Source: Lepidodermella squamata (taxonomy: Eukaryota; Animalia; Gastrotricha). From it: 64,000 nt of DNA. The stretch spans positions 2,604,001 through 2,668,000 of the forward strand of contig JBLDXI010000007.1 in the NCBI GenBank assembly GCA_047495785.1. Reading direction: 5' to 3'. Positions 7,710-61,399 of the stretch are shown one piece after another. The number at the start of each line of letters is the position of its first letter. Within the stretch, counting starts at the first letter, position 1. The notes below the pieces were generated by a model. That model saw only the letters and a program-made list of their open reading frames with translations. It searched no databases and was not told the DNA's origin. The translations under genes were made by a program, and so were the position numbers.

Positions 7710-8861
7710 TCAGCCCTGGCATTGGAGGTCTGAAAATTGGAGAAAGTTCGATAGAACAAATGGAAGGTGCAGTCGTTCGATACAACTCAACCGATTATAA
7801 CCTGCTGGCAAGTGACGTAGTATTGCTATGCGACATGTGGCTTGCAGCGAAAGAGGGAAGCATCGCCTCAGGAAACCAACCAACCGCCACATTGCCCGGC
7901 GTTGCATCTCATCGGTTCGAACCAAAAAATCGTCTAGAGATTCTGATAAGCGGCGAAAACTGCACTCGGAACTTTGCATGGTCGCAACGAGGAGTCGGGC
8001 GAAGTAGTTAGGCTCGAGCTGAAGTGTTGAGGTTAAATAATCGTCATCTCGGCTCAAAAACGCGGCGACGGCGAATAAATCGTAAACTGACCAGCTTGAA
8101 GCGTTGAGATTCGGATCGCTGTCTTTTGGCGAGAAGCCAAGTTTCCCGCCCAATCGGATCAAAGGAATTATTGCGTTATTCAGTAGTTGCTTAGCCTTCC
8201 AAGCCGGAGTTAGACGTTGGCTGCTTTTGTAGTTCCAAAATAGAAACAACAGACAAACTAACAACGGCGTCATTGTCCGATTCTCGCAGCATAAGGAATT
8301 GAAGAATCGAGCTGGAAGACTCTGAAACAACACAGCTGCAGCTTCAGGCGCATCGATCGCCAGTAGATGCAAGTTGGAAAACGGGTTATCATACAAATTT
8401 TGATGATCGCTATGTTTAAGAAGGATTTTCAGTATTTCAATGCGAGTTTCTATCGATGCAGAATTCATGCGTTGGGCTAAATCGATACTTTGATGGCTAA
8501 TAGCTTGAGCGGTTTGATAGGCATTAGCTACAGCTTCGACGTAGTCTTCTAATGAATTAACATTAGGCAACGGCGATGTGCATTCAGCAGAAATTGCAAG
8601 AAGATGGACACCACTCTTCGATGCGTCGGAAACGATGTCACATCCTGAAGATTCCAGCAGAATGATGATAGCTGATAAATTGCCTCGCATAACCGCGAAT
8701 TTTAGCAGGCGGTGTAAACTTGATTTCGAGCAATGGCGAGCTGTTTGTCGAAGAATTTCGTGAAAATCGAATGATTCGCCTTGGTCATCGAGCCAAATAG
8801 CTGATAAAGCCGCTGCCTCTAGGCATGCATGGTTAGGCATACCACAGCTGTTACTAGTCAT
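7710..8861 (-). CDS. SOCS-box protein with degenerate ankyrin-like helical repeats (ASB-like), intronless
   Basis: C-terminal PLSLQATCRIAILRHL...LHLPFVLSNFL SOCS box; LKFAVMRGNLSAIIILLE and TPLLVC ankyrin-like motifs. Confidence 0.8.
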   Translation of the reverse strand: MTSNSCGMPNHACLEAAALSAIWLDDQGESFDFHEILRQTARHCSKSSLHRLLKFAVMRGNLSAIIILLESSGCDIVSDASKSGVHLLAISAECTSPLPNVNSLEDYVEAVANAYQTAQAISHQSIDLAQRMNSASIETRIEILKILLKHSDHQNLYDNPFSNLHLLAIDAPEAAAVLFQSLPARFFNSLCCENRTMTPLLVCLLFLFWNYKSSQRLTPAWKAKQLLNNAIIPLIRLGGKLGFSPKDSDPNLNASSWSVYDLFAVAAFLSRDDDYLTSTLQLEPNYFARLLVATMQSSECSFRRLSESLDDFLVRTDEMQRRAMWRLVGFLRRCFPLSLQATCRIAILRHLPAGYNRLSCIERLHLPFVLSNFLQFSDLQCQG

Positions 8862-11964: not shown

Positions 11965-13089
11965 TCACTCAATAGCAAAACGAAGAGGAAGCAAGTCCGA
12001 GAACATAAGGAAGTCGGTCAACACATTCGGCAAGCCGAGATGTAAAACAAAGCTCAGGCGTCTGTTACCGGGCGGAAGTTGGCGCAAAATTTGAATTCGA
12101 CACAGCTGTTGTAGAGTGAGTGGGTATGATCTCATTAGGAACGCCAATAAACGAAGCATTGCGAAACGCTGAGCCGGTTCGGTCGGTTGTACGAGAAAAT
12201 CATCGCAGGATTGTATCATTCGTCGAAAATCGAACTTCGCCGAGGCAACGGCAGATATGAGCAATCGACCGAAATAATTCAACCGAAATTTCAAGATTCC
12301 CGTGACAAAATCGTCATCCGCATTCAAAAACGCGCCAACTGCTAGCAGATCATAGAAAGACCAACTCGATGCATCATACTGGTCGGAGTCGCAATTTGCT
12401 CCTCTTTGAATCAAAGGAATAATCGCGTTTTCCAACAACGCGCATATTGTGTGTTTGGAATTTAGCCGATTTTTGTAGTTCCACGTCAAATGTAAGAGAC
12501 ATGCTGTTAGTGGGGTCATGGTTCCATTCTCACAGCATAGTGCGTTGAAGTAACAAGGCGGAAGTTTCTGGAATAGCAACTCAGCAGCCTGAGGAGCATC
12601 AACCGCCAACAAATGGAGATAAGTGAAAGGATTGTTATCTCTGGAAGAAATCTGGCTATAATCTCTACGCAAATTTGAAGATTCGATTACCAGTTTGAAT
12701 ATCTCTATCCGGTCGCTAATCGGTACAGCAGCTGGAAGACGGATTATCGGAGGATCCTGCCCATCCGAGCTGCTCATTGTTTGAGCATATTGAGCCAGCG
12801 GAGTGATAATAGAGGGTGGGGATGTATATTCTGCAGCTATTGCCAGCAAGTTCAAGCCCATTTTCTGAGCATTTCGGAGAAACTGATCCTCAATTGCGAT
12901 CAAGCAATCGACTGCAGGCAGATTCCCTCGCATTATCGCGAATTTCAAGAGGCGATAGAAGCACTCCTTCGAGCAGTAAGTCGCTGCAAGATTTAGAACT
13001 TCGTTGAGTTCCGAGGTCGATTCCACGCCTAATCCTAGCCAGATTGCTGACATGGCAGAGATTTCCAGCGATGCTGAAATGTCGCTCAT
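11965..13089 (-). CDS. SOCS-box protein (paralog of 7710-8861), intronless
   Basis: PLTLQQLCRIQIL...LGLPNVLTDFL; shares the blocks LLKFAxMRGNL, LHLLAxDAP and ASSWSxYDL with the paralog. Confidence 0.8.
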   Translation of the reverse strand: MSDISASLEISAMSAIWLGLGVESTSELNEVLNLAATYCSKECFYRLLKFAIMRGNLPAVDCLIAIEDQFLRNAQKMGLNLLAIAAEYTSPPSIITPLAQYAQTMSSSDGQDPPIIRLPAAVPISDRIEIFKLVIESSNLRRDYSQISSRDNNPFTYLHLLAVDAPQAAELLFQKLPPCYFNALCCENGTMTPLTACLLHLTWNYKNRLNSKHTICALLENAIIPLIQRGANCDSDQYDASSWSFYDLLAVGAFLNADDDFVTGILKFRLNYFGRLLISAVASAKFDFRRMIQSCDDFLVQPTEPAQRFAMLRLLAFLMRSYPLTLQQLCRIQILRQLPPGNRRLSFVLHLGLPNVLTDFLMFSDLLPLRFAIE

Positions 13090-39113: not shown

Positions 39114-39515
39114 GGTCGAAACCAGTAGCGATGATGAATCTTTTTATCTTGCCGATGAAAAACCGAGGAAACAGAGCGTAGTAATAATGGAACGAATGAC
39201 TCGCATTTTAGCAAGATCCGTGCATTTATCGACTCAAATTTCGGATTTTAAGAATCAAATTTCATCTAAAAAAACAGGCAAAGAGTGAAGAAAAAGAGCA
39301 GAGTTGGGTGTCGAATTAGTTCCTCTCTACTTCTGAATCGATCCAACCGAATTTAAGCTGAACCGTTTAACAGACAACTCAAATTTATAGAAATTTAGAG
39401 AAGAAAAGACGATCGTGAACTTTGACGAAGAAAAATCATGGAGTTTCATCAGTGGGACAGTTGTTTTCTGCGGATTATCTGCGATTTCGGCGTTTCCTTT
39501 TTTAAATCGATACTG

Positions 39516-39740
39516 ATGCCCTCGCTGATCCTAGGATTTTTTATTTTAGCTACCTGACGCCCTAAGCTACGTAGAAAAGATATCGATGTTGGATTCCAAG
39601 ACGGCTGATATCGGGAAAATCACTGATCAGTAAAATCGATACTTGGAATCGATATCGGCTCTATAGGATGAAGTATAATTCGTAAACTGACCGCTCATAG
39701 TGCAAATTACGCGCGATATGAAGGTCTATCGCTTAGGCAT
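39516..39740. mobile_element. 225-bp interspersed repeat with ATGCC...GGCAT ends; second copy at 55633-55857
   Basis: Two colinear copies of equal length and high similarity. Confidence 0.75.
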
Positions 39741-39861
39741 AATACATACCTAAGACAAAGATTGGTCAGCCTTGAAAACAATTTTTAAAATTTTTTCTAA
39801 ATTTAGAAATAATTCATATCGAAAGCGAAAAGACATAAAATCGTGCATCCAATGAAAAATC

Positions 39862-42981: not shown

Positions 42982-44597
42982 ATGACTGATTTAACAGAAA
43001 TTGAGGATGGTGGGAACTTCAGGTTGCCGAATGTCGAGCCTGCTCAATATTTATCGCCGCAAGAAATCAAAGATTTAATGCTGCTATCTAAAGATTTTGT
43101 AACTATGCACGGCGGCTTGCTGGAGAAGCCGGGTAAAATTATTCAACACGTGCCTTTCCTACTATTTCCATCGCCTTTCCCGCGCAATTTATTCGACATG
43201 GTTGTGCAAATTCAAATCGATTTCCACGTGAGTAGAAAAATCGCACATTAAAAAATGAAAAAAATCAAAATTTGAAATATGAAAATTTGTGGCCATTTTT
43301 TATTAAAAATTGAAAAGTCGAAAATTTAAGGTGGTCTTTTAAATTAATTTTTTTAAATTTTTTTCAGAATTTGATTCATCGGCTTTCCCTTGATCGAGAC
43401 TTCATGTTCGAAGCTCTCAGACCAATTATCGAGACAGATCGGCTGACCAAACAGCTCTGGGACCTTTACGAAAGGGTTCACCTCAAAGAAACGCAAAACC
43501 CACGAATCTACATGATTTTATGCCGAAACGACTACATGTTAGATGCTTCAGTCGAAGGGGAGATGAGCATCAAGCAGGTCGAATTCAACATGATAGCAGC
43601 TGGCTTGGGTCCAATGCAAACTTCAGTCACGAGCTGGCACCAATTCCTAATGGAAAGACTTCTGAAAGAAGGACCTAAACCAGCCTTGGAAAAACCTGGC
43701 CAAGGAATCGCTGAAACCATCGTTGAAGCTGTCAAAGCTTACGAGCAAATTTACGAAACTAGCGAAACCCACGTCCTATTCGTCGTCGATTCGCCTACGA
43801 AAGATATTTTCGACCAACGTTGGGTTGAAGTTGATATTTTAAAATCTCACCCTACCGCTAAAATTATTCGAAGAACTTTCAAAGACTTGCGGTTTTTGAT
43901 TGATCGCGATGAAATTGCGAAATCTGGCCGGTTGATTGTTGAAAATCTCGAAATTTCTGTCGTCTATTATCGACATGGCTACGACGAAGGGCATTACGAC
44001 TTTGAAGCTGGCGATTGGGAGTTAGTTCGACAGCCGATCGAACTCAGCCGAGCTGTAAAATCACCCTGCGTTGCTCATCAATTAGCGAATACGAAAATAA
44101 TGCAACTAGCCGTGATGAAAACCGGTGTTTTAGAGCGGTTTGGTTTGAATCCGGAGCAAGCTGCAAGAATGCGGTCAACTTTCACCGAAATGCTTGGTAT
44201 TGAAGATGAAAAAATCTTTGAATCAGGAATTTCTCGGCCTAACGATTACGTTTTAAAGCCGATGAAAGAAGGTGGCGGTCATAATTATTTCGGTGCTGAA
44301 ATGGTAGTGAAACTTGAAGAATTACGGCGAAATCCTGATAATAGAGAAACGTTTATTCTGATGAAACTCATGAAACCGCCGCATTATTTAAATATCAGTG
44401 TAACACCCGGTGATTCGACGGCTAAATTCGAGAATTTTTCGACTGAACTCGGCATTTTTGGCGGATATCTCGTGGTTGATGGTCACGTGAGGTGCAACAA
44501 TTATCTCGGTTATCTTATGCGATCTAAAACTGCGCAGGCGAAGGAGAGCGGAATAATGTCTGGATCTGGCAAATTGGACTCGGCATTTTTTGTCTGA
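42982..44597 (+). CDS. gss: Eukaryotic glutathione synthetase-like protein, copy A (2 exons)
   Basis: PFLLFPSPFP, RNDYM, IFDQR, YYRHGY, VLKPMKEGGGHN, ELGIFG and GYLMRSK. Confidence 0.9.
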
Positions 44598-45315: not shown

Positions 45316-46880
45316 ATGTGCTCGACGAAAGAGCAGCCGAACAAAGAAATGTTCGAAATTCCACTGCCGACCGATCCTCCACGTTACCTGACTCGGTCTG
45401 AAATTCAAGATTTAATTCTGATGGCTAAAGACTATGTAACAATGCACGGAGGTCTTTTACGGACTCCAGAAAATCCCGACTCGAGTGATATGGCGAGACA
45501 TGTCCCATTTCTTCTATTTCCGACGCCTTTTCCTCGGCAGTTATTTGATCTCGTTATGGCGATTCAAGCCGATTTTCACGTAAATTTATAGCAAAAATAC
45601 TGATTTTTGAAAAAGTCTTTATTTTATTTTAGAATTTAATACATCGCGTCTCTTTGGATGAAAAGTTTCTGTACGACGCTTTGAAATCGATAATCGAAAC
45701 AGATAGTTTCACATCTCGGCTGTGGAACTTGTACAAAGAAGTATATTCTGAACTTGGCTCTAAGCCAAGAATTTACATGGCAATGACGCGGAACGACTAT
45801 ATGCTAGATTCTGGTGCTGAACTCGGGATAAAGCAGGTTGAATACAACATGATCGCAGCTGGCTGTGGTCCTATGCAAACGAAAGTCAACTCGTGGCACA
45901 AATTCCTCATCGAACGGTTGTTAGGCATCGATTCGAAACCTCTCGCTGTAACCGGCCATGACTCCCCGACAGATGCTGGTAAAGGAATCGCGGCGACAAT
46001 TATTCAAGCCCTTGAAGCTTACAATCAAACCTTTTCGACTTCTGATACTCATGTTTTGTTCGTAATCGATTCTCCGTCGAGAAATATCTTCGACCAACGC
46101 TGGGTTGAACTTGAGATTTTGAAAGCTCACCCAACGGTTCGAGTCCTTCGGAGGACATTAGCGGATCTAAGGACACTCATCGACCGTGACGAAGTTGCGA
46201 GATCTGGCCGTTTAATGGTTGAAGGGCTCGAAATTGCAGCTGTTTACTACAGAACGGGTTACAACGAGGAGAACTACGACTTCGAAGCCGGTGATTGGGA
46301 CCTAGTCCGGAGGCCGATCGAACTCAGTCGAGCAGCTAAATCTCCCTGTGTAGCTCATCAACTGGCGAATATGAAGCGCGTTCAACAAATTCTTGCTAAT
46401 CCCGGTTGGTTGGAACGATTCGGCTTGAATCCGGAACAAGCTGGTAGAATGCGCCAGACCTTCACAGTCATGCAAGGATTAGAGTCTGACGAAGCTTTGA
46501 AACTTGGATTATCCCGACCTAACGACTTTGTGTTGAAGCCGATGAAGGAGGGCGGTGGGAACAATTATTTCAGCTCAAATTTGGTGGCTAAGATCGAGGA
46601 ACTGCGGGACAAACCTGACCGAGTGAACTACGTCCTTATGAGCCTAATAAAACCCCCTTTCAGTCCTAACGTCAGCATCGCACATGGCAATAGCTGCTGC
46701 GGGATCAAATTTGAAAAATACTCCACCGAACTCGGAATCTTCGGCGGTTTTGTCGTTGTGGACGATGTGATGGTGAAGAACGACTACCTTGGTTATCTCA
46801 TGAGATCGAAACCTCTTGGTGCCAATGAGGGTGGAATCATGTCTGGGGTCGGTCGCATAGACTCAGCTTATTTTGTCTGA
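45316..46880 (+). CDS. gss: Eukaryotic glutathione synthetase-like protein, copy B (2 exons)
   Basis: Same motifs (KPMKEGGGNN, ELGIFG, EGGIMSG) and the same intron position. Confidence 0.9.
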
Positions 46881-54346: not shown

Positions 54347-55007
54347 ATGGTAGGTCTTTTCCAAGCTAACGTGCAATTTTCTGCATTTTCTTCTCCATTT
54401 TGTCGCAGTATTATAAGAAATTGATTCTCGCCCGATGGTTGGCGGAAACGTCGGGAAAAAATTGCGATAAAGAGAACAAAGAATCAGATGCAGCAGATTC
54501 GGCGGCCGATCATGGAAATCTCAACCATCCAACATTGCCACTCAAGTCTATTCTGAAGGAAACGAAGAAAGTCACGACGAACGTTCTGAAATCTGCAGAT
54601 AATGAACCTGTGAAGAAGAAAGCCCGGCAGGCTATTAGGCCCAAAGTGAAAGCTGATCGCGAACGGCCATCATCGCTGCTTAAAGTCAAGGTTATGTTGG
54701 GTATAAGTTCCGCTTATTTTTTTAATTTTTTAATTATTCAGTATCCTGCAAATTTGAGCCGGGCGTGCGAAACTCTTCGCGAGGTAACTTGGCAATTTTT
54801 CCTGTACTTTAGGAAATTATTTCTTTCGTTTTTTAGATATTTTCGTTACATCCTCGACCAAGCCCTGAGTTTTTGGCAAGTCTCTCCGACAACATGAAAA
54901 TCGGCGTCGGCTATTTGAAGCTTTGGTTCCACGAACAGCGAAAATTATCGAATATCCTCCGAAAAAAATTAGTGACAGCACCGAACAATTCTAACCCGAA
55001 TAATTGA
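54347..55007 (+). CDS. Divergent single-homeodomain protein with a basic N-terminus (4 exons, the first being the ATG only)
   Basis: LSRACETLRE|IFSLHPRPSPEFLASLSDNMKIGVGYLKLWFHEQRK; phase-0 GT-AG introns. Confidence 0.7.
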
Positions 55008-55128
55008 TTGAAAATCGTAACTATTTAATTAAATTTATATTTTAGTGATTTTATCGATTTTATCGATTGGCAATTTCCATATTTGAGCGAAGAGTCTTGT
55101 TGTGATTGGATTGGTTTTGTGACGATTA

Positions 55129-56787
55129 ATGGAGCATTCGAAGCAAACAGCTCGTAAGTCGACCGGTGGGAAGCAGCCGCGTAAACAGCTCATTTCCAAG
55201 TCGCCGCGAAAGCCGCCTATCGTTAAGAAGCGCCGCGAAGAAGCGCCGAAACGCACGATCCGGTTCCGCCCTGGCACCGTGGCGCTGCGCGAAATTCGCC
55301 GCTATCAAAAATCGACTGAGCTGCTGATCCGCAAGATGCCGTTTCAGCGCCTCGTGCGACAGGTCCTTCAAGGTGAAATTTTGATTTTTTTAATTATTTA
55401 TGGTCGGCTGATGAGGCGGTTTGCACTGCGTTATGAACCTAATTTAGTTTAATTTCAGGGCAGTATTTGAAATTAATTTTTTCGATTTTATTTCGGAAAA
55501 TTAGGACATCCATCATGGGTCCAAATATTTGCACCGCTAAAAGTTAGGATCCATCAGAAAATTCAAGAGTCCTGGCACGACATTTTTCATATTCTTTGCA
55601 ATTTCGGCGTTTTCGCTTTTTGATGGAAACTGATGCCATCCCTGAGCCTGGGATTTTTTATTTTAGCTACCTGGCGTCCCAAGCTACGCAGACAAAATAT
55701 CGACGTTGGGTTTTAAGATGGCTGATATCGGGAAAATCACTGATCAGTAAAATCGATAGTTGGAATCGATATCGGCTCTATAAGATGAAGTATAATTCGT
55801 AAACTGACCGCTCATAGCGCAAAGTACGCGTGATATGACGGTCTATCGGTTGGGCATGATAACAAAAAATTGAGATTCCTGTGAAGACTAGAAACTCGGA
55901 AACCCGTATTTAGTGCCCGAGTCTCAAATTTAGTGCTAGAACCCTAAATTTAGGGTGCGCATTTAGCAAACGTATAAATATTTCGACTCAATAAGCGCTA
56001 ATTTCTTGACCTATCTTAATTCAATTCCATTCCCAAATTGAAGAAGCTTAATCTTAATCACGATTTTATTCAATCATAAAAGGTCAATCCAAGTTCAATG
56101 AATAATTTAGATTCCTTTTAGTTTTACGTAATCGAATTTCAAAACCCGTCGCAAATCCAACTTGGAGAGGTACCAACAAATGTTTGTTCAACAAATGTTT
56201 CCGCTGTTCAAAAGTTCTGCTGAATTTTAGGGCTAGGAAATTCGATTTTTCGATAATTAATCTGAACGTCTAAATAATTAGGACTCTATTTGTAGGCAAG
56301 TAAATTGTTGGAATTTTGTTCCGCTAAAAGCCGGGTCCTTATCCTAATTAATTAGGCTTCAAAAATGTCTGAGGGCCATTTTTGAACCTATTGGATATTC
56401 GAAAATCGGTTCCGGTTGAAGCGAGACCCGTCCCAATTTTTTTCTACCACAATTTCAGTTCCTTGAAAAGAACCACCCTGTGTTAATTGTTTGCGCGATG
56501 GATACTTTGGATATGGGAACTTAACAATTCAAGTAGACTTCGGCCAGAACTAGAAAAAAAGAGAAGCTATTGAAATTAATGATTTTGTTTTACTTTCAGA
56601 ATTCAAGATCAACTTCCGCATGCAAGCTGCTGCGGTCGAAGCGTTGCAAGAAGCCTCCGAAGCCTACCTCACCGGCCTGTTCGAAGACACGAACCTGTGC
56701 GCAATTCACGGAAAACGCGTGACGATCATGCCGAAAGACATTCAACTGGCTCGTCGCATCCGGGGCGAAACTTACCGCCAACGCTAA
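55129..56787 (+). CDS. Divergent histone H3 variant (exons 55129-55372 and 56600-56787)
   Basis: [34 protein letters not shown] and [30 protein letters not shown]; 1227-bp phase-1 intron; downstream AATAAA. Confidence 0.95.
55633..55857. mobile_element. 225-bp interspersed repeat in the H3 intron (copy of 39516-39740)
   Basis: Direct sequence similarity. Confidence 0.75.
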
Positions 56788-56961
56788 AACAATCGTCATC
56801 TTTCGAAATCGGAGAAAAAGAGAAATTTCATCTCTCAATCACAATTGACGCGCTCAATATGCTGCGAATTTTTCATGAATAATTTATGAATATTTTTTTC
56901 AAATAATATTTTCAAATAAAAATAAAAATTCATTTAAATTTTAGTGCATTTATTTGTTGAA

Positions 56962-58119
56962 ATGAATTGTTTCTACTACTTTCCGGTTTATGTACCTCAA
57001 CTGATTGCGGCACCTGTCAATAATAACCAACAGGTGAGGAACCAATCCATATCTATACCAGCTGCGATTCCTGAACCAAAAGAATTTTCAGTCACAATTC
57101 CCGCGTCTCTCGAGCCTACAAAATTGACAATTAGGCTGGTTAACGATCAAGAATCGAAGGTTCCAGTCTCGAATTATCGATCGAATTCGATTCAGATCAT
57201 TGAAATCGAAGACGAAGATGAAAGACCTGCGAAATCCACCTCGAATTGCGTCGAAATTGCGACCATTATAAGTTCGAATGAAACCTCAAGTTCGACAAAG
57301 GAAAAATCGGCAATCGAAGTCAAATCGGAAGAAATCAGCCACGCTGTGAAAAAATCGATGCTAGAGGAAGGCTTCAAATCAGATCCGTTGATGAATGATC
57401 CGGCGAAAGCGGACCAATTAGCGGAAGATCTGGGGATTTCGAGGAATAAATTGACGGCTTGGTTCGAAAGGAAGCGGGAAAAATACCGGACAAGCCTGAA
57501 CCCTACTCAAGTTCAGCGGTTAACGAAAATCTATGAACAGAAGTCGAATCCAAGCCTTCGTTTCATTCGGAAAATCGCGATGAGGCTTGAAGTCGAAAGC
57601 TTTGTTGTTAGTTTCGAATTAAAATTGAAATTTGAAATTTTACTATAAATTTGTAATTTAAATGAAAATTTGAAATTTGAATTAAAATCTGAAATTAAAA
57701 TTGAAATTAATTTGAATCATCTAAATTTTTAAAATTTTAAAATTCATTTGATTATTTTTTTGAAACAGATAGAAATTTGGTTCAACGAGAAGCGGAATGA
57801 TAAGAACGCAAGATACCTGACTAGGCGGGAAAGTGCTGAATTGTTTGATTTCTATAAGAAATGCCGCGAGCCTACAATAACTCAGATGAGCGATTTGGCT
57901 TTGCGTATGAATTTACCGGCTTTCAAAGTATTCCGCTGGTTTCGATTTAGGAAACAAGGCGACTCCAAGGTCAGATTTATTTAGCCATTTTTGGTTCGAG
58001 TAACGAAATTGTTTTATTTTTTTAAGACTGACGATGAGCAGAACTTGCGAGGCAGCTTGGTTGATGTCAAATCTGAACCTATTGAGAGTCTTTCTTCTAA
58101 TCTGAGTCAGCGTTCATAG
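56962..58119 (+). CDS. Triple-homeodomain protein (3 exons)
   Basis: LAEDLGISRNKLTAWFERKR; LNPTQVQRL..YEQKSNP..|IEIWFNEKR; LTRRE..CREPT..VFRWFRFRK. Confidence 0.8.
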
Positions 58120-59667: not shown

Positions 59668-61399
59668 TCAATCTAACACGATCACACTGGATGACGTAGA
59701 AGTGAAACTCATCGACAGCGTCATTTCCGATATTGAGCTACTTCTGGTATTAGCTGGACACGTCGTCGGCTCGTAGGCTGTAACCGAAGATGACGAAGAT
59801 GAAGCGTCGGAATCTTGCCAAGTCGCGACCACGGCTTGGTAAGCCCTGTCGACAGCCGTCCTCGCGTCTCGGATCATACACGACCTCTCACAGTCGTCAC
59901 ATCGCCATGGAAACTTGTCTTTGATCCATGGGTTTATGCATCCCCTTGAAAGTACATTGAATATGTTAAAAAAAATAGAAAATTAATCACAGTCATTCAA
60001 ATTTAAATTGTAAATTCAAATGATAAATTTAAATGAATTTATTTATAACGCTCTGCGACATTTGAGGCAACGACAACTGAGCAAAATATCTGTAACTTGC
60101 CTGTGAATTGCGCCAGCAGCTCCGCAAACCGAGCACGGTAAAACATCCCATTTTCCGTTAATACTGGGCTTGGAATATTCTCGGCCTTTGCGGCACTTGC
60201 ACTCGCTCGCATGGCAGGACATAAAGCCGTTGTCTTGCTCGCTAAATGACCCGTCCATCTCCCAGTTGGCATCTTTCACCGGCAGCTCAATGCCGAGCCA
60301 TTTCAGTTCATCGGCGAAGCCTTCTTTACGACAATTCGGGCAACTAAAGTGATACGCACCGGCTGAATGGGCCCAACGCTGTTAAAAAGAAACATTAAAT
60401 AAATTAATCGGAAATGGATAATAAATTCAAATAATTTAATTTAAATAATTAATTTATTTTACTTGAAAATATTAATTAATTGAGTCGTTTTATTAATGTT
60501 GAGGCCCGAGTCTGATTCGGCCCGTACACGCTTCGGCTGGCCCGTGCGCAGGCGGATAACATTGATTTGCCGCTCCGCGCTTGGGCCGGTCTGAAACGTG
60601 CCCATATCGGCATGGTGTTGGCCCGAGCACCGCGAAAAACTCAGCGCCGCACTCGGGCCGCCGGGCTCGGACCTCTGGAATCTGGCCGCCGGGCTTGGGT
60701 AATCCTACAACTAACACCCTTCCCGATAATTGTATCAAGTGCCGACCCAAGCCCGGCGGCCCGACTACATAATAATTATTTGAAAAATATTAATTAATCA
60801 AAGATCAACATGTAGATAATTACTTGGAGACATGTCCGATGGAACCACCGCCGGCAGAGGGGGCAATATATTTGAGCGAATCCAACTCTTTCGACCACTT
60901 GATCCATGCAAATCATGCACTCTGATGACTTCTCTGCCGCCGAACCGTTGTCCAACTCTGCTTGCTTTCGGTGGTGAATAGGGCAGAATGACTTGAAGTC
61001 ATTGAACACGAACATCACATTATTTTCGACACCACAAGGCACATGGTACCGCTGTAGAAATTTTCGAATATTTAATCGAATTTTGAGCAGATTCCGAAAA
61101 ATTACCTGATCGCAATTTGGTTCGTAACATTTAGCACCGGCATTTTTCTCGCCGCAGAAAACGCACGAGATACGAGCGGAACGTCTCGCCTCGCGTTTAA
61201 TGGCCTCGCTTTTAAAATAGAAGAGGCAAGTCGTGCCGCCCTTGCCGTCCGAATCGCATTCGTCCTGTTGTAGCAGATCGCTGCCGAAATACAAGCAGTT
61301 GCGATGAGATTTCACGCCGTCTGGCCGCGAGAATACGTCGCCAATCAGAGGATTGTCGACGTTCGGGCCTTTAGAACACAACATGCAAATAAGGGCCAT
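59668..61399 (-). CDS. PHF7/G2E3-family protein (extended PHD, RING and PHD; no HECT domain), 4 exons
   Basis: CxxC...HRNCLYFGS.L.Q; IKREARR; C.FC...GAKC; YHVPC; SFCPIH; WFHRTCLQ; SAGAYHFSCPNC; GI.LP.KDANWE; C.A..C.C..GR. Confidence 0.9.
60496..60770. mobile_element. GC-rich GGCCCG-repeat insertion in an AT-rich intron, probable MITE
   Basis: Sharp composition boundaries, ATGT...ACAT ends and repeated GGCCCG/CGGGCC. Confidence 0.5.

What the first reader, a model, noticed from the sequence alone, without database searches (positions are those of the whole stretch)
55129..56787. Histone H3 variant with a rewired N-terminal tail, flanked by homeobox genes
Seen: the tail begins EHSK instead of ARTK, so A1, R2 and T3 are changed while K4, K9, S10, K14, K18, K23 and K27 are kept. 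S28 is Pro. The SAPATGGVKKPH segment is replaced by [16 protein letters not shown] (4 aa longer), removing the normal K36 context. Residues 87-90 are AAVE (neither SAVM nor AAIG), F84 is Met, and there is a TYRQR C-terminal extension. An intron and AATAAA suggest replication-independent expression. Established: A1-R2-T3 is needed by many PHD readers and by Haspin/Survivin, and 87-90 sets chaperone choice. Loop 1 has normal length and Q68 and T107 are retained, which argues against a typical CENP-A. Inference: a germline or sperm-type variant.
Basis: partly seen in the sequence, partly recalled or inferred. Interest (0 to 1): 0.75.

Follow-up and report, generated by a model that had tools for sequence, protein, structure and literature searches.

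The report
Conserved histone H3 variant, rewritten tail
A small invertebrate (probably a rotifer) has a real, expressed gene for an unusual histone H3 whose signalling tail is selectively rewritten; a second gene of the same design in another assembly shows it is old and kept by selection, but where it acts is unknown.

Summary
A two-exon gene (55129-55372 and 56600-56787, phase-1 GT..AG intron of 1227 nt) encodes a 143-aa H3. It starts M-E-H-S-K instead of M-A-R-T-K. K4 to K27 are kept, the K27-R40 linker is rewritten and 4 aa longer, residues 87-90 are AAVE, and the C-terminus ends ETYRQR.

The gene looks functional:
- There is no histone stem-loop, and AATAAA follows the stop.
- One run holds the exons and 3' UTR but not the unique intron.
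- All six allelic differences in the CDS are synonymous.

An exhaustive protein search found one relative, on a Logan contig (L001). It has the same intron position, the same derived residues (ME start, S3, Q15, S-P-R-K-P-P at K27, A-P-K, F41, Q73, L75, A86/A87/E90, T134), and the same downstream homeodomain gene. Between the two, dS is 1.3 and dN/dS 0.14.

This is therefore an undescribed, conserved, replication-independent H3 variant lineage. It is neither H3.3 nor a typical cenH3. The germline or sperm reading is untested. It has indirect support from the SPKK-type motif and the changed K79 surface, which are also seen in male-germline histones elsewhere. A paper reports CenH3 loss in rotifers and chaetognaths, so a centromere test is worthwhile.

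The parts
55022..55114 (+). Putative promoter: TATTTAA at 55022, two TATCGAT (DRE-like) at 55052 and 55061, three ATTGG (inverted CCAAT) at 55066, 55105 and 55110
   Evidence: ATTGG occurs 3 times in 150 nt against 0.15 expected from the window. TATCGAT occurs 2 times against 0.02 expected. The motifs are not conserved upstream of the L001 relative, so their function is inferred only.
55129..55372 (+). Exon 1: Met1 to Gln81 plus the first base of codon 82. It encodes the N-terminal tail, helix alphaN and most of alpha1.
   Evidence: Pfam Histone E 8e-15. PDB H3 E 4e-25. X2 contigs lie at 55126-55180, 55209-55263 and 55307-55371.
55129..55140 (+). Rewritten N-terminus M-E-H-S in place of M-A-R-T
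   Evidence: The relative has M-E-L-G-S.
55201..55260 (+). S-P-R-K-P-P (SPKK-type motif containing K27), followed by a basic linker 4 aa longer than in H3 that ends in A-P-K-R
   Evidence: S-P-R-K-P-P and A-P-K-[RK] are identical in L001. The linker between them varies in length (+4 here, +13 in L001).
55373..56599 (+). Intron, 1227 nt, GT..AG, phase 1, inside the codon for canonical residue 77
   Evidence: The unique parts have zero depth in X2 but about 33 in X1. L001 has a 56-nt intron at the same position and phase.
55570..56004 (.). High-copy repeat inside the intron
   Evidence: Summed contig depth in X1 reaches 36,000 against a baseline of about 33. A second copy lies at 39474-39744, 87% identical.
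56600..56787 (+). Exon 2: end of alpha1, loop 1, alpha2, alpha3, the C-terminal extension and stop TAA
   Evidence: Pfam Histone E 1e-22. PDB H3.3 E 3e-26. X2 contigs run from 56598 to 56899 with no mismatches.
56629..56640 (+). Chaperone-specificity patch, canonical residues 87-90 = A-A-V-E
   Evidence: L001 has A-A-L-E, so A87 and E90 are conserved in the lineage.
56788..56926 (+). 3' UTR with AATAAA at 56915 and 56921, and no histone stem-loop
   Evidence: X2 contig 56773-56899, with X2 depth falling to 0 after 56961.
56962..57984 (+). Conserved downstream neighbour on the same strand: a multi-homeodomain gene
   Evidence: Pfam Homeodomain hits. Collinear BLASTP match to the gene downstream of the L001 relative, E 5e-7. 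No X2 depth at 56962-57300.

Best explanation
This is a functional, polyadenylated, replication-independent gene for a nucleosomal histone H3 variant. It belongs to an undescribed, conserved lineage.

Shown:
- The histone fold is about 83% identical to H3.2/H3.3, and helices alpha2 and alpha3, which in canonical nucleosome structures carry the H4 and H3' contacts, are nearly unchanged.
- The tail block K4-Q-T-A-R-K9-S10-T-G-G-K14 and the block P-R-K18 are unchanged.
- A fixed set of other positions is re-coded in both known members.

Inferred from established rules:
1. The start Met-Glu cannot be trimmed to a free Ala1, because methionine aminopeptidase needs a small second residue. Met-Glu is also a NatB-type N-acetylation substrate. 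The free A1-R2-T3 end is therefore gone. That end anchors PHD-finger K4 readers, WDR5 and the Haspin/Survivin axis.
2. A-A-R-K27-S-A has become S-P-R-K-P-P. This is an SPKK-type minor-groove and CDK-type motif, and probably a poor context for K27 methyl writers and readers.
3. The linker that threads between the DNA gyres is longer, Pro/Lys/Arg-rich and fast-evolving. The G33-G34-V35 context needed for K36 methylation is lost.
4. A87 and E90 match neither the H3.1/2 patch nor the H3.3 patch, which suggests a separate deposition route.
5. The K79/loop-1 surface is changed.

Most likely use: a specialised packaging H3 deposited outside S phase in a restricted cell type, most plausibly the germline, gametes or early embryo. 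The resulting chromatin would still accept K9-type marks but would be blind to K4, K27 and K36 signalling.
For: - Gene model and residues.
- H3 identity.
- Replication-independent type: intron; no stem-loop (and for L001); AATAAA here and ATTAAA in L001.
- Expression: run X2 holds 86% of the words of exon 2 plus UTR but only 13% of the 2-kb locus. Its contigs cover variant-specific parts of both exons and the UTR with 0-3 mismatches and none of the unique intron. One 94-nt contig ends 29 letters beyond the exon 2 border.
- Selection: six of six allelic differences in the CDS are synonymous, against about 0.0002 expected under neutrality. Flanking DNA differs by 4-9%.
- Relative L001: same intron position and phase, the shared derived residues listed above, 110/142 identity, dS 1.30, dN 0.185. 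The two group at 100/98 support away from 40 other H3s. The downstream homeodomain gene is conserved.
- Parallels: residues around K79 are replaced in male-specific H3 variants of Oikopleura, in pollen H3 and in C. elegans H3.3-like genes (PMC3156773). SPK(K/R) motifs mark sperm H2B variants (PMC9903204).
Against: - No stage-, sex- or tissue-resolved expression could be obtained.
- The tool only guesses that X2 is RNA, and the splice junction itself was not read letter by letter.
- Only two members are known, and the organism of L001 is unknown. L001 could be an ancient paralogous block rather than an orthologue, although its higher G+C in coding and non-coding DNA suggests another genome.
- One SPKK-type motif is a short pattern.
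- The promoter motifs are not shared with L001.
- The neighbouring homeobox gene is silent in X2, so co-regulation is not shown.
- All statements on readers, writers, N-terminal processing and chaperones are inferences from other organisms.
Confidence: 0.6

Rival explanations
1. It is a general replacement H3 used in somatic cells or in a physiological state such as dormancy, stress or heterochromatin maintenance, with no germline specificity. The tail changes tune chromatin stability rather than gamete packaging.
For: The gene type is replication-independent. Transcripts are present in what looks like a whole-animal transcriptome, at modest depth: 4-25, against about 1900 for contigs of another H3 laid on the same stretch. 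CCAAT- and DRE-like promoter motifs are common in proliferation genes.
Against: H3.3 is almost invariant in animals and would normally fill this role. The derived features (SPKK-type motif, changed K79 surface, fast-evolving basic linker) resemble gamete-specific histones (PMC3156773, PMC9903204). The low apparent level fits a restricted cell type, although contig depth is a poor measure.
Confidence: 0.25
2. It is a cryptic centromeric H3. The lineage is reported to have lost CenH3, and this H3-derived, fast-evolving variant would mark centromeres or holocentromeres instead.
For: A 2025 paper reports loss of CenH3, CENP-T and most CenH3-assembly genes in Gnathifera, the group of rotifers and chaetognaths (PMC12460157). 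The two family members differ most in the tail linker and loop 1, the regions that evolve fastest in cenH3s. L001 has a loop 1 two residues longer and lacks K79. The patch at residues 87-90 is private to the lineage. No cenH3 note exists among this genome's scan notes, which is weak evidence.
Against: The fold is about 80-83% identical to H3, against about 50% for cenH3s (PMC3156773). The first 27 tail residues align with H3 and keep K4, K9, S10, K14, K18 and K27. Q68 and T107 are kept. The window copy has a normal loop 1. dN/dS of 0.14 shows no sign of the adaptive evolution typical of cenH3. That this genome is a rotifer's rests on earlier notes that I did not test.
Confidence: 0.08
3. It is a decaying or neutral duplicate of an H3 gene without a function of its own.
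For: It is a single divergent copy in the window. Word-index searches found no close relatives among annotated proteins.
Against: The ORF is intact across a spliced intron. Transcripts are present. Six of six allelic differences are synonymous. A relative at saturated synonymous distance keeps the same derived residues, intron and neighbour, with dN/dS 0.14.
Confidence: 0.03

Closest known systems
Histone H3.3 (replication-independent replacement H3)
   Same: Intron-bearing, polyadenylated gene without a stem-loop. A87 is present. The fold is about 83% identical. It is probably deposited outside S phase.
   Different: I89 and G90, which define H3.3 chaperone choice, are V/L and E. The S31 region is replaced. 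The N-terminus A-R-T is lost. It evolves fast (dN 0.185 between the two members), whereas H3.3 is nearly invariant.
Male-germline H3 variants of Oikopleura dioica (H3t.1-3), mammalian H3t, and pollen H3 of plants (PMC3156773)
   Same: Lineage-specific H3 paralogues with substitutions clustered around K79 on the disc surface and in the fold. One of them (H3t.3) is an orphan replacement-type gene.
   Different: No common residue changes and no orthology. Those variants keep the A-R-T-K start. Expression of the present gene is unknown.
C. elegans H3.3-like genes his-69, his-70 and his-74 (PMC1484599)
   Same: Divergent, lineage-restricted H3.3-like genes with altered ends alongside bona fide H3.3.
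   Different: Those are truncated or lack counterparts in sister species. The present lineage is full length and conserved at saturated synonymous distance.
SPKK-motif histones: sperm H2B/H1 of sea urchins and hydrozoans, and plant H2A.W (PMC9903204; bioRxiv 10.1101/2020.03.19.998609)
   Same: An S-P-[KR]-[KR] motif in a basic tail segment next to DNA, thought to bind the minor groove and stabilise or compact chromatin.
   Different: Those carry several motifs on H2B, H1 or H2A tails. Here a single motif is created on H3 by converting A24-A25 to S-P, so that K27 itself is its last residue.
cenH3 / CENP-A
   Same: An H3-derived variant with its own 87-90 patch and fast-evolving tail and loop-1 segments. 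One member has a longer loop 1.
   Different: Much higher identity to H3, an alignable tail that keeps the H3 modification sites, and Q68 and T107 retained. Localisation is unknown.
Arabidopsis sperm H3.10/MGH3 (from my own knowledge, not checked here; my paper search for it found nothing)
   Same: A gamete H3 whose altered K27 neighbourhood is reported to make it refractory to K27 methylation. This is a precedent for a signalling-blind H3.
   Different: Independent origin in plants. The N-terminus is not rewritten.

Membership tests
Histone H3 family | Histone fold matching H3, with alphaN, alpha1-3 and the H3-type tail | tested here: met
   Pfam PF00125 on both exons (E 8e-15, 1e-22). Best solved-structure matches are all H3/H3.3 at E about 1e-25. 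100/134 identity to H3.2 and H3.3.
Canonical replication-dependent H3 | Intronless gene ending in the histone stem-loop, inside a histone cluster | tested here: not met
   Has a 1227-nt intron. No RF00032 match at E up to 5. AATAAA signals are present. No other histone gene lies in the 64-kb window.
H3.3 | A87, I89 and G90 in alpha2, and S/T31 in the tail | tested here: not met
   Residues 87-90 are A-A-V-E here and A-A-L-E in L001. The residue-31 region is replaced.
H3.3 | Replication-independent gene structure (introns, polyadenylation) | tested here: met
   The X2 contig extends 112 nt past the stop.
cenH3 / CENP-A | Histone fold only about 50-60% identical to H3 | tested here: not met
   About 83% (76/92) for the window copy and about 80% for L001, counted by me on the alignment.
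cenH3 / CENP-A | N-terminal tail unalignable with H3 | tested here: not met
   Positions 4-27 align without gaps, with K4, K9, S10, K14, K18 and K27 kept.
cenH3 / CENP-A | Loop 1 longer than in H3 | tested here: inconclusive
   Normal length in the window copy, two residues longer in L001.
cenH3 / CENP-A | Localisation to centromeric chromatin | not testable with these tools
   Needs cytology or ChIP.
Germline or sperm-specific histone variants | Expression restricted to gametogenic cells | not testable with these tools
   Only one probable RNA run (X2, undefined sample) holds the transcript.
SPKK-motif chromatin-compacting histones | S/T-P-K/R-K/R motifs in a DNA-proximal basic tail, usually repeated | tested here: inconclusive
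   One S-P-R-K motif, conserved in both members. It is not repeated, and DNA binding is untested.

The most novel reading that the evidence does not exclude
In a clade reported to have lost CenH3 and most of its assembly machinery (Gnathifera, PMC12460157), this conserved, fast-evolving, H3-like variant is the histone that marks centromeres or holocentromeres. It has its own 87-90 patch and, in one member, a lengthened loop 1. It would be a newly evolved centromeric H3 that gene-family surveys filed as ordinary H3.
Probability: 0.07. Interest if true: 0.9.

Novelty: new variant of a known kind. Interest (0 to 1): 0.6.

Why it matters
H3 tails are among the most conserved sequences in eukaryotes, and natural variants that change them selectively are rare and informative. 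This lineage keeps the K9/S10/K14/K18 block untouched. It removes the free A1-R2-T3 end, turns the K27 site into an SPKK-type motif, and dismantles the K36 context. It has held that design over a distance at which synonymous sites are saturated.

That makes it a natural separation-of-function H3. It could show which tail signals a cell type can do without, and which chaperone reads a Glu at position 90.

If the animal is a rotifer, the variant also bears on how a clade reported to lack CenH3 organises its chromosomes, and on how gametes or resting eggs are packaged in animals without described sperm basic proteins.

Tried and rejected
- Two word-index protein searches found only generic H3s at 71% identity or less and no relative. 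The first was on the whole of exon 1. The second was on the variant-specific part, residues 17-58.
- The exhaustive representative search found the single relative, P0027.
- Two DNA-pattern scans of metagenome contigs were run. The strict pattern (G-G-K-Q-P-R-K ... S-P-R-K-P-P) gave nothing. The loose pattern ([10 protein letters not shown]) gave 8 loci, all with an ordinary M-A-R-T-K start, so they are not family members.
- Rfam found no stem-loop or other RNA.
- I tried to name the organism and failed. The atlas search and the word search with the glutathione synthetase ORF gave no animal relatives, only fungal ones at 32-35%. Exact look-ups of two window ORFs found nothing. I rely on earlier notes for 'probably a rotifer'.
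- The upstream ORF 54400-54897 was tested as a homeobox gene and has no support.

Full report
**Observation.** The stretch 55129-56787 holds a two-exon gene on the + strand.
- Exon 1 (55129-55372) starts at an ATG preceded by an in-frame TGA at 55120. It ends at a G|GTGAAA donor.
- Exon 2 (56600-56787) follows a TTTCAG acceptor and ends in TAA.
- The joined CDS is 432 nt and gives 143 aa.

Both exons match Pfam Histone (E 8e-15 and 1e-22). Both match solved H3/H3.3 chains at E about 1e-25.

- The start is E-H-S-K.
- K4, K9, S10, K14, K18, K23 and K27 are kept, and S28 is P.
- A 12-residue segment is replaced by 16 residues.
- F84 is M, residues 87-90 are A-A-V-E, and Q68 and T107 are kept.
- Loop 1 has normal length, and the end is E-T-Y-R-Q-R.

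By my count on the alignment, the fold (positions 44-135) is about 83% identical to H3. The tail is 23/47 identical.

Two corrections apply. A lysine at the K36 position survives in a new A-P-K-R context. Only the downstream neighbour is a verified homeobox gene. The upstream ORF has no homeodomain hit.

**Is the gene real and used?** Several results say so.
- No histone stem-loop follows it (Rfam at E up to 5; regex).
- AATAAA lies 128 and 134 nt after the stop.
- GC3 is 0.67, against 0.43-0.54 for neighbouring ORFs.

Two public runs hold the locus.
- X1 covers everything at a flat depth of about 33, so it is DNA and probably the source of the assembly.
- X2 holds 86% of the words of exon 2 plus UTR, but only 13% of the whole 2-kb stretch.

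When laid on the locus, X2 contigs cover 55126-55371 and 56598-56899 with 0-3 mismatches. These include the variant-specific N-terminus, the linker, the C-terminal extension and the 3' UTR. X2 has no depth in the unique parts of the intron. One 94-nt contig has 65 nt on exon 2 and 29 further letters beyond its border, as a spliced junction would. I could not read those letters, so splicing is strongly suggested rather than proven.

X1 also carries a second haplotype. All six of its differences inside the CDS are synonymous. About 0.0002 is expected if changes were neutral. The flanks differ by 4-9%.

**Relatives.** Two word-index searches found only generic H3s at 71% identity or less. The exhaustive search of 1.84 billion representatives gave one hit that shares the odd features, P0027. 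It is a read-through call on a 3.5-kb Logan contig of run SRR31012058 (L001).

Re-read with a 56-nt GT..AG intron, L001 encodes a 153-aa H3. The intron has the same position and phase as the window's. The protein shares these derived residues:
- M-E start, S3, Q15, S22.
- S-P-R-K-P-P at K27.
- A Pro/Lys/Arg-rich linker, here 13 residues longer than in H3, ending in A-P-K-K.
- F41, Q73, L75.
- A86, A87 and E90.
- T134 and an Arg-rich end.

The two proteins are 110/142 identical. dS is 1.30, dN 0.185 and the ratio 0.14. They group with 100/98 support away from 40 other H3s, although both sit on long branches.

The gene downstream on the same strand is a homeodomain gene in both. It has a collinear match of E 5e-7 and a similar M-N-x-F start. 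L001 also lacks a stem-loop and has ATTAAA 66 nt after its stop.

L001 has higher G+C in coding and non-coding DNA, which suggests another species. I cannot exclude an ancient paralogous block. Either way the design has been retained for a long time.

L001 differs in one notable way. Its loop 1 is two residues longer and lacks K79. Pattern scans of metagenome contigs found no further member.

**Mechanism.**

Shown:
- The helices that in canonical nucleosome structures hold H4 and the second H3 are almost unchanged.
- The block from K4 to K14 and P-R-K18 is invariant in both members.
- The changes are concentrated at the extreme N-terminus, around K27, in the linker to R40, in residues 73-90 and at the C-terminus.

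Inferred from established biochemistry:
- Met-Glu is not trimmed by methionine aminopeptidase and is a NatB-type substrate. The protein should therefore begin with a blocked Met-Glu rather than a free Ala1.
- PHD-finger readers of K4, WDR5 (R2) and the Haspin/Survivin axis (A1, T3) depend on that free end.
- S-P-R-K is an SPKK-type and CDK-type motif. Such motifs characterise sperm H2B/H1 and plant H2A.W (PMC9903204).
- The Pro residues on both sides of R-K27 should hinder chromodomain and PRC2-type recognition.
- Loss of G33-G34-V35 should hinder SETD2-type K36 methylation.
- The longer basic linker lies where the tail passes between the DNA gyres.
- G90 is the main determinant for the H3.3 chaperones. 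A conserved E90 fits neither the H3.3 nor the H3.1/2 patch, so a separate deposition route is likely.

Substitutions around K79 are also a shared feature of male-germline H3 variants in Oikopleura, of pollen H3 and of C. elegans H3.3-like genes (PMC3156773; PMC1484599).

My best reading is a specialised packaging H3 of a restricted cell type, most plausibly the germline. It would stay competent for K9-type marks but be blind to K4, K27 and K36 signalling. The gene-level part of this I hold at about 0.85 and the germline part at about 0.35.

**Context and rivals.** Earlier notes of this scan take the genome for a rotifer's with TTAGGG telomeres. I did not test that. My only hint is a tandem glutathione synthetase pair whose nearest named relatives are fungal.

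No H3 variant of this kind is mentioned in the rotifer histone paper I read (PMC2642717). The other histone-variant papers listed by my searches I saw only as titles and abstracts.

A 2025 paper reports that CenH3, CENP-T and most of the assembly genes are lost in Gnathifera (PMC12460157). That makes the cenH3 rival worth a direct test. The sequence speaks against a typical cenH3: the fold is 80-83% identical to H3, the tail aligns with its modification sites kept, Q68 and T107 are retained, and dN/dS is 0.14. I give this rival 0.08.

A general somatic or state-specific replacement role gets 0.25. A decaying duplicate gets 0.03.

**Verdict.** This is a new, conserved lineage of replication-independent H3 variants with a selectively rewritten tail and a conserved homeobox neighbour. 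Its cell type and function remain to be shown.

Noticed in passing
window 43371-44597 and 45654-46880 (+): Tandem pair of long single-ORF glutathione synthetase genes (Pfam). The nearest named relatives are fungal (chytrid, zoopagomycete, glomeromycete) at 32-35%, and the best hits are unnamed metagenome proteins at 50% and 40%. Possible horizontally acquired gene in an animal genome.
   Followed up: partly
window 55570-56004, with a second copy at 39474-39744: Very high-copy repeat inside the H3 variant's intron. Summed contig depth reaches 36,000 against about 33 baseline in the DNA run, and it is also present in the probable RNA run. The second copy is 87% identical. It contains three AAATTTAG(T/G)G units. 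This insertion probably explains why the intron is 1227 nt here and 56 nt in L001.
   Followed up: partly
window 56962-57984 (+) and L001 1369-2709 (+): A fast-evolving multi-homeodomain gene starts only about 40 nt after the H3 variant's poly(A) signal. It keeps this position in L001 and is weakly related to the homeobox genes at 30-40 kb. It is silent in run X2. Such tight, conserved tandem spacing could mean shared regulation.
   Followed up: partly
window 55022-55114: Dense promoter-like motifs upstream of the H3 variant: three inverted CCAAT boxes, two TATCGAT (DRE-like) and a TATTTAA. They are not conserved in L001.
   Followed up: partly
window 60794-61399 (-): ORF with a PHD-like zf-HC5HC2H domain followed by a RING/PHD finger. 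It is a possible chromatin reader or ligase 4 kb from the histone variant.
   Followed up: no
L002 61-90, L004 1076-1105, L009 1304-1333 (metagenome contigs SDBV01...): An unrelated H3 of an unknown eukaryote with a normal M-A-R-T-K start but a shortened tail. The K23-K27 region is replaced by K-Q-K-R-P-A-F-R-G-R, and it also has Q15 and Q73.
   Followed up: no
window 7710-8861 and 11965-13089 (-): Two paralogous ORFs of about 380 aa that end in a SOCS box and have no other recognised domain.
   Followed up: no
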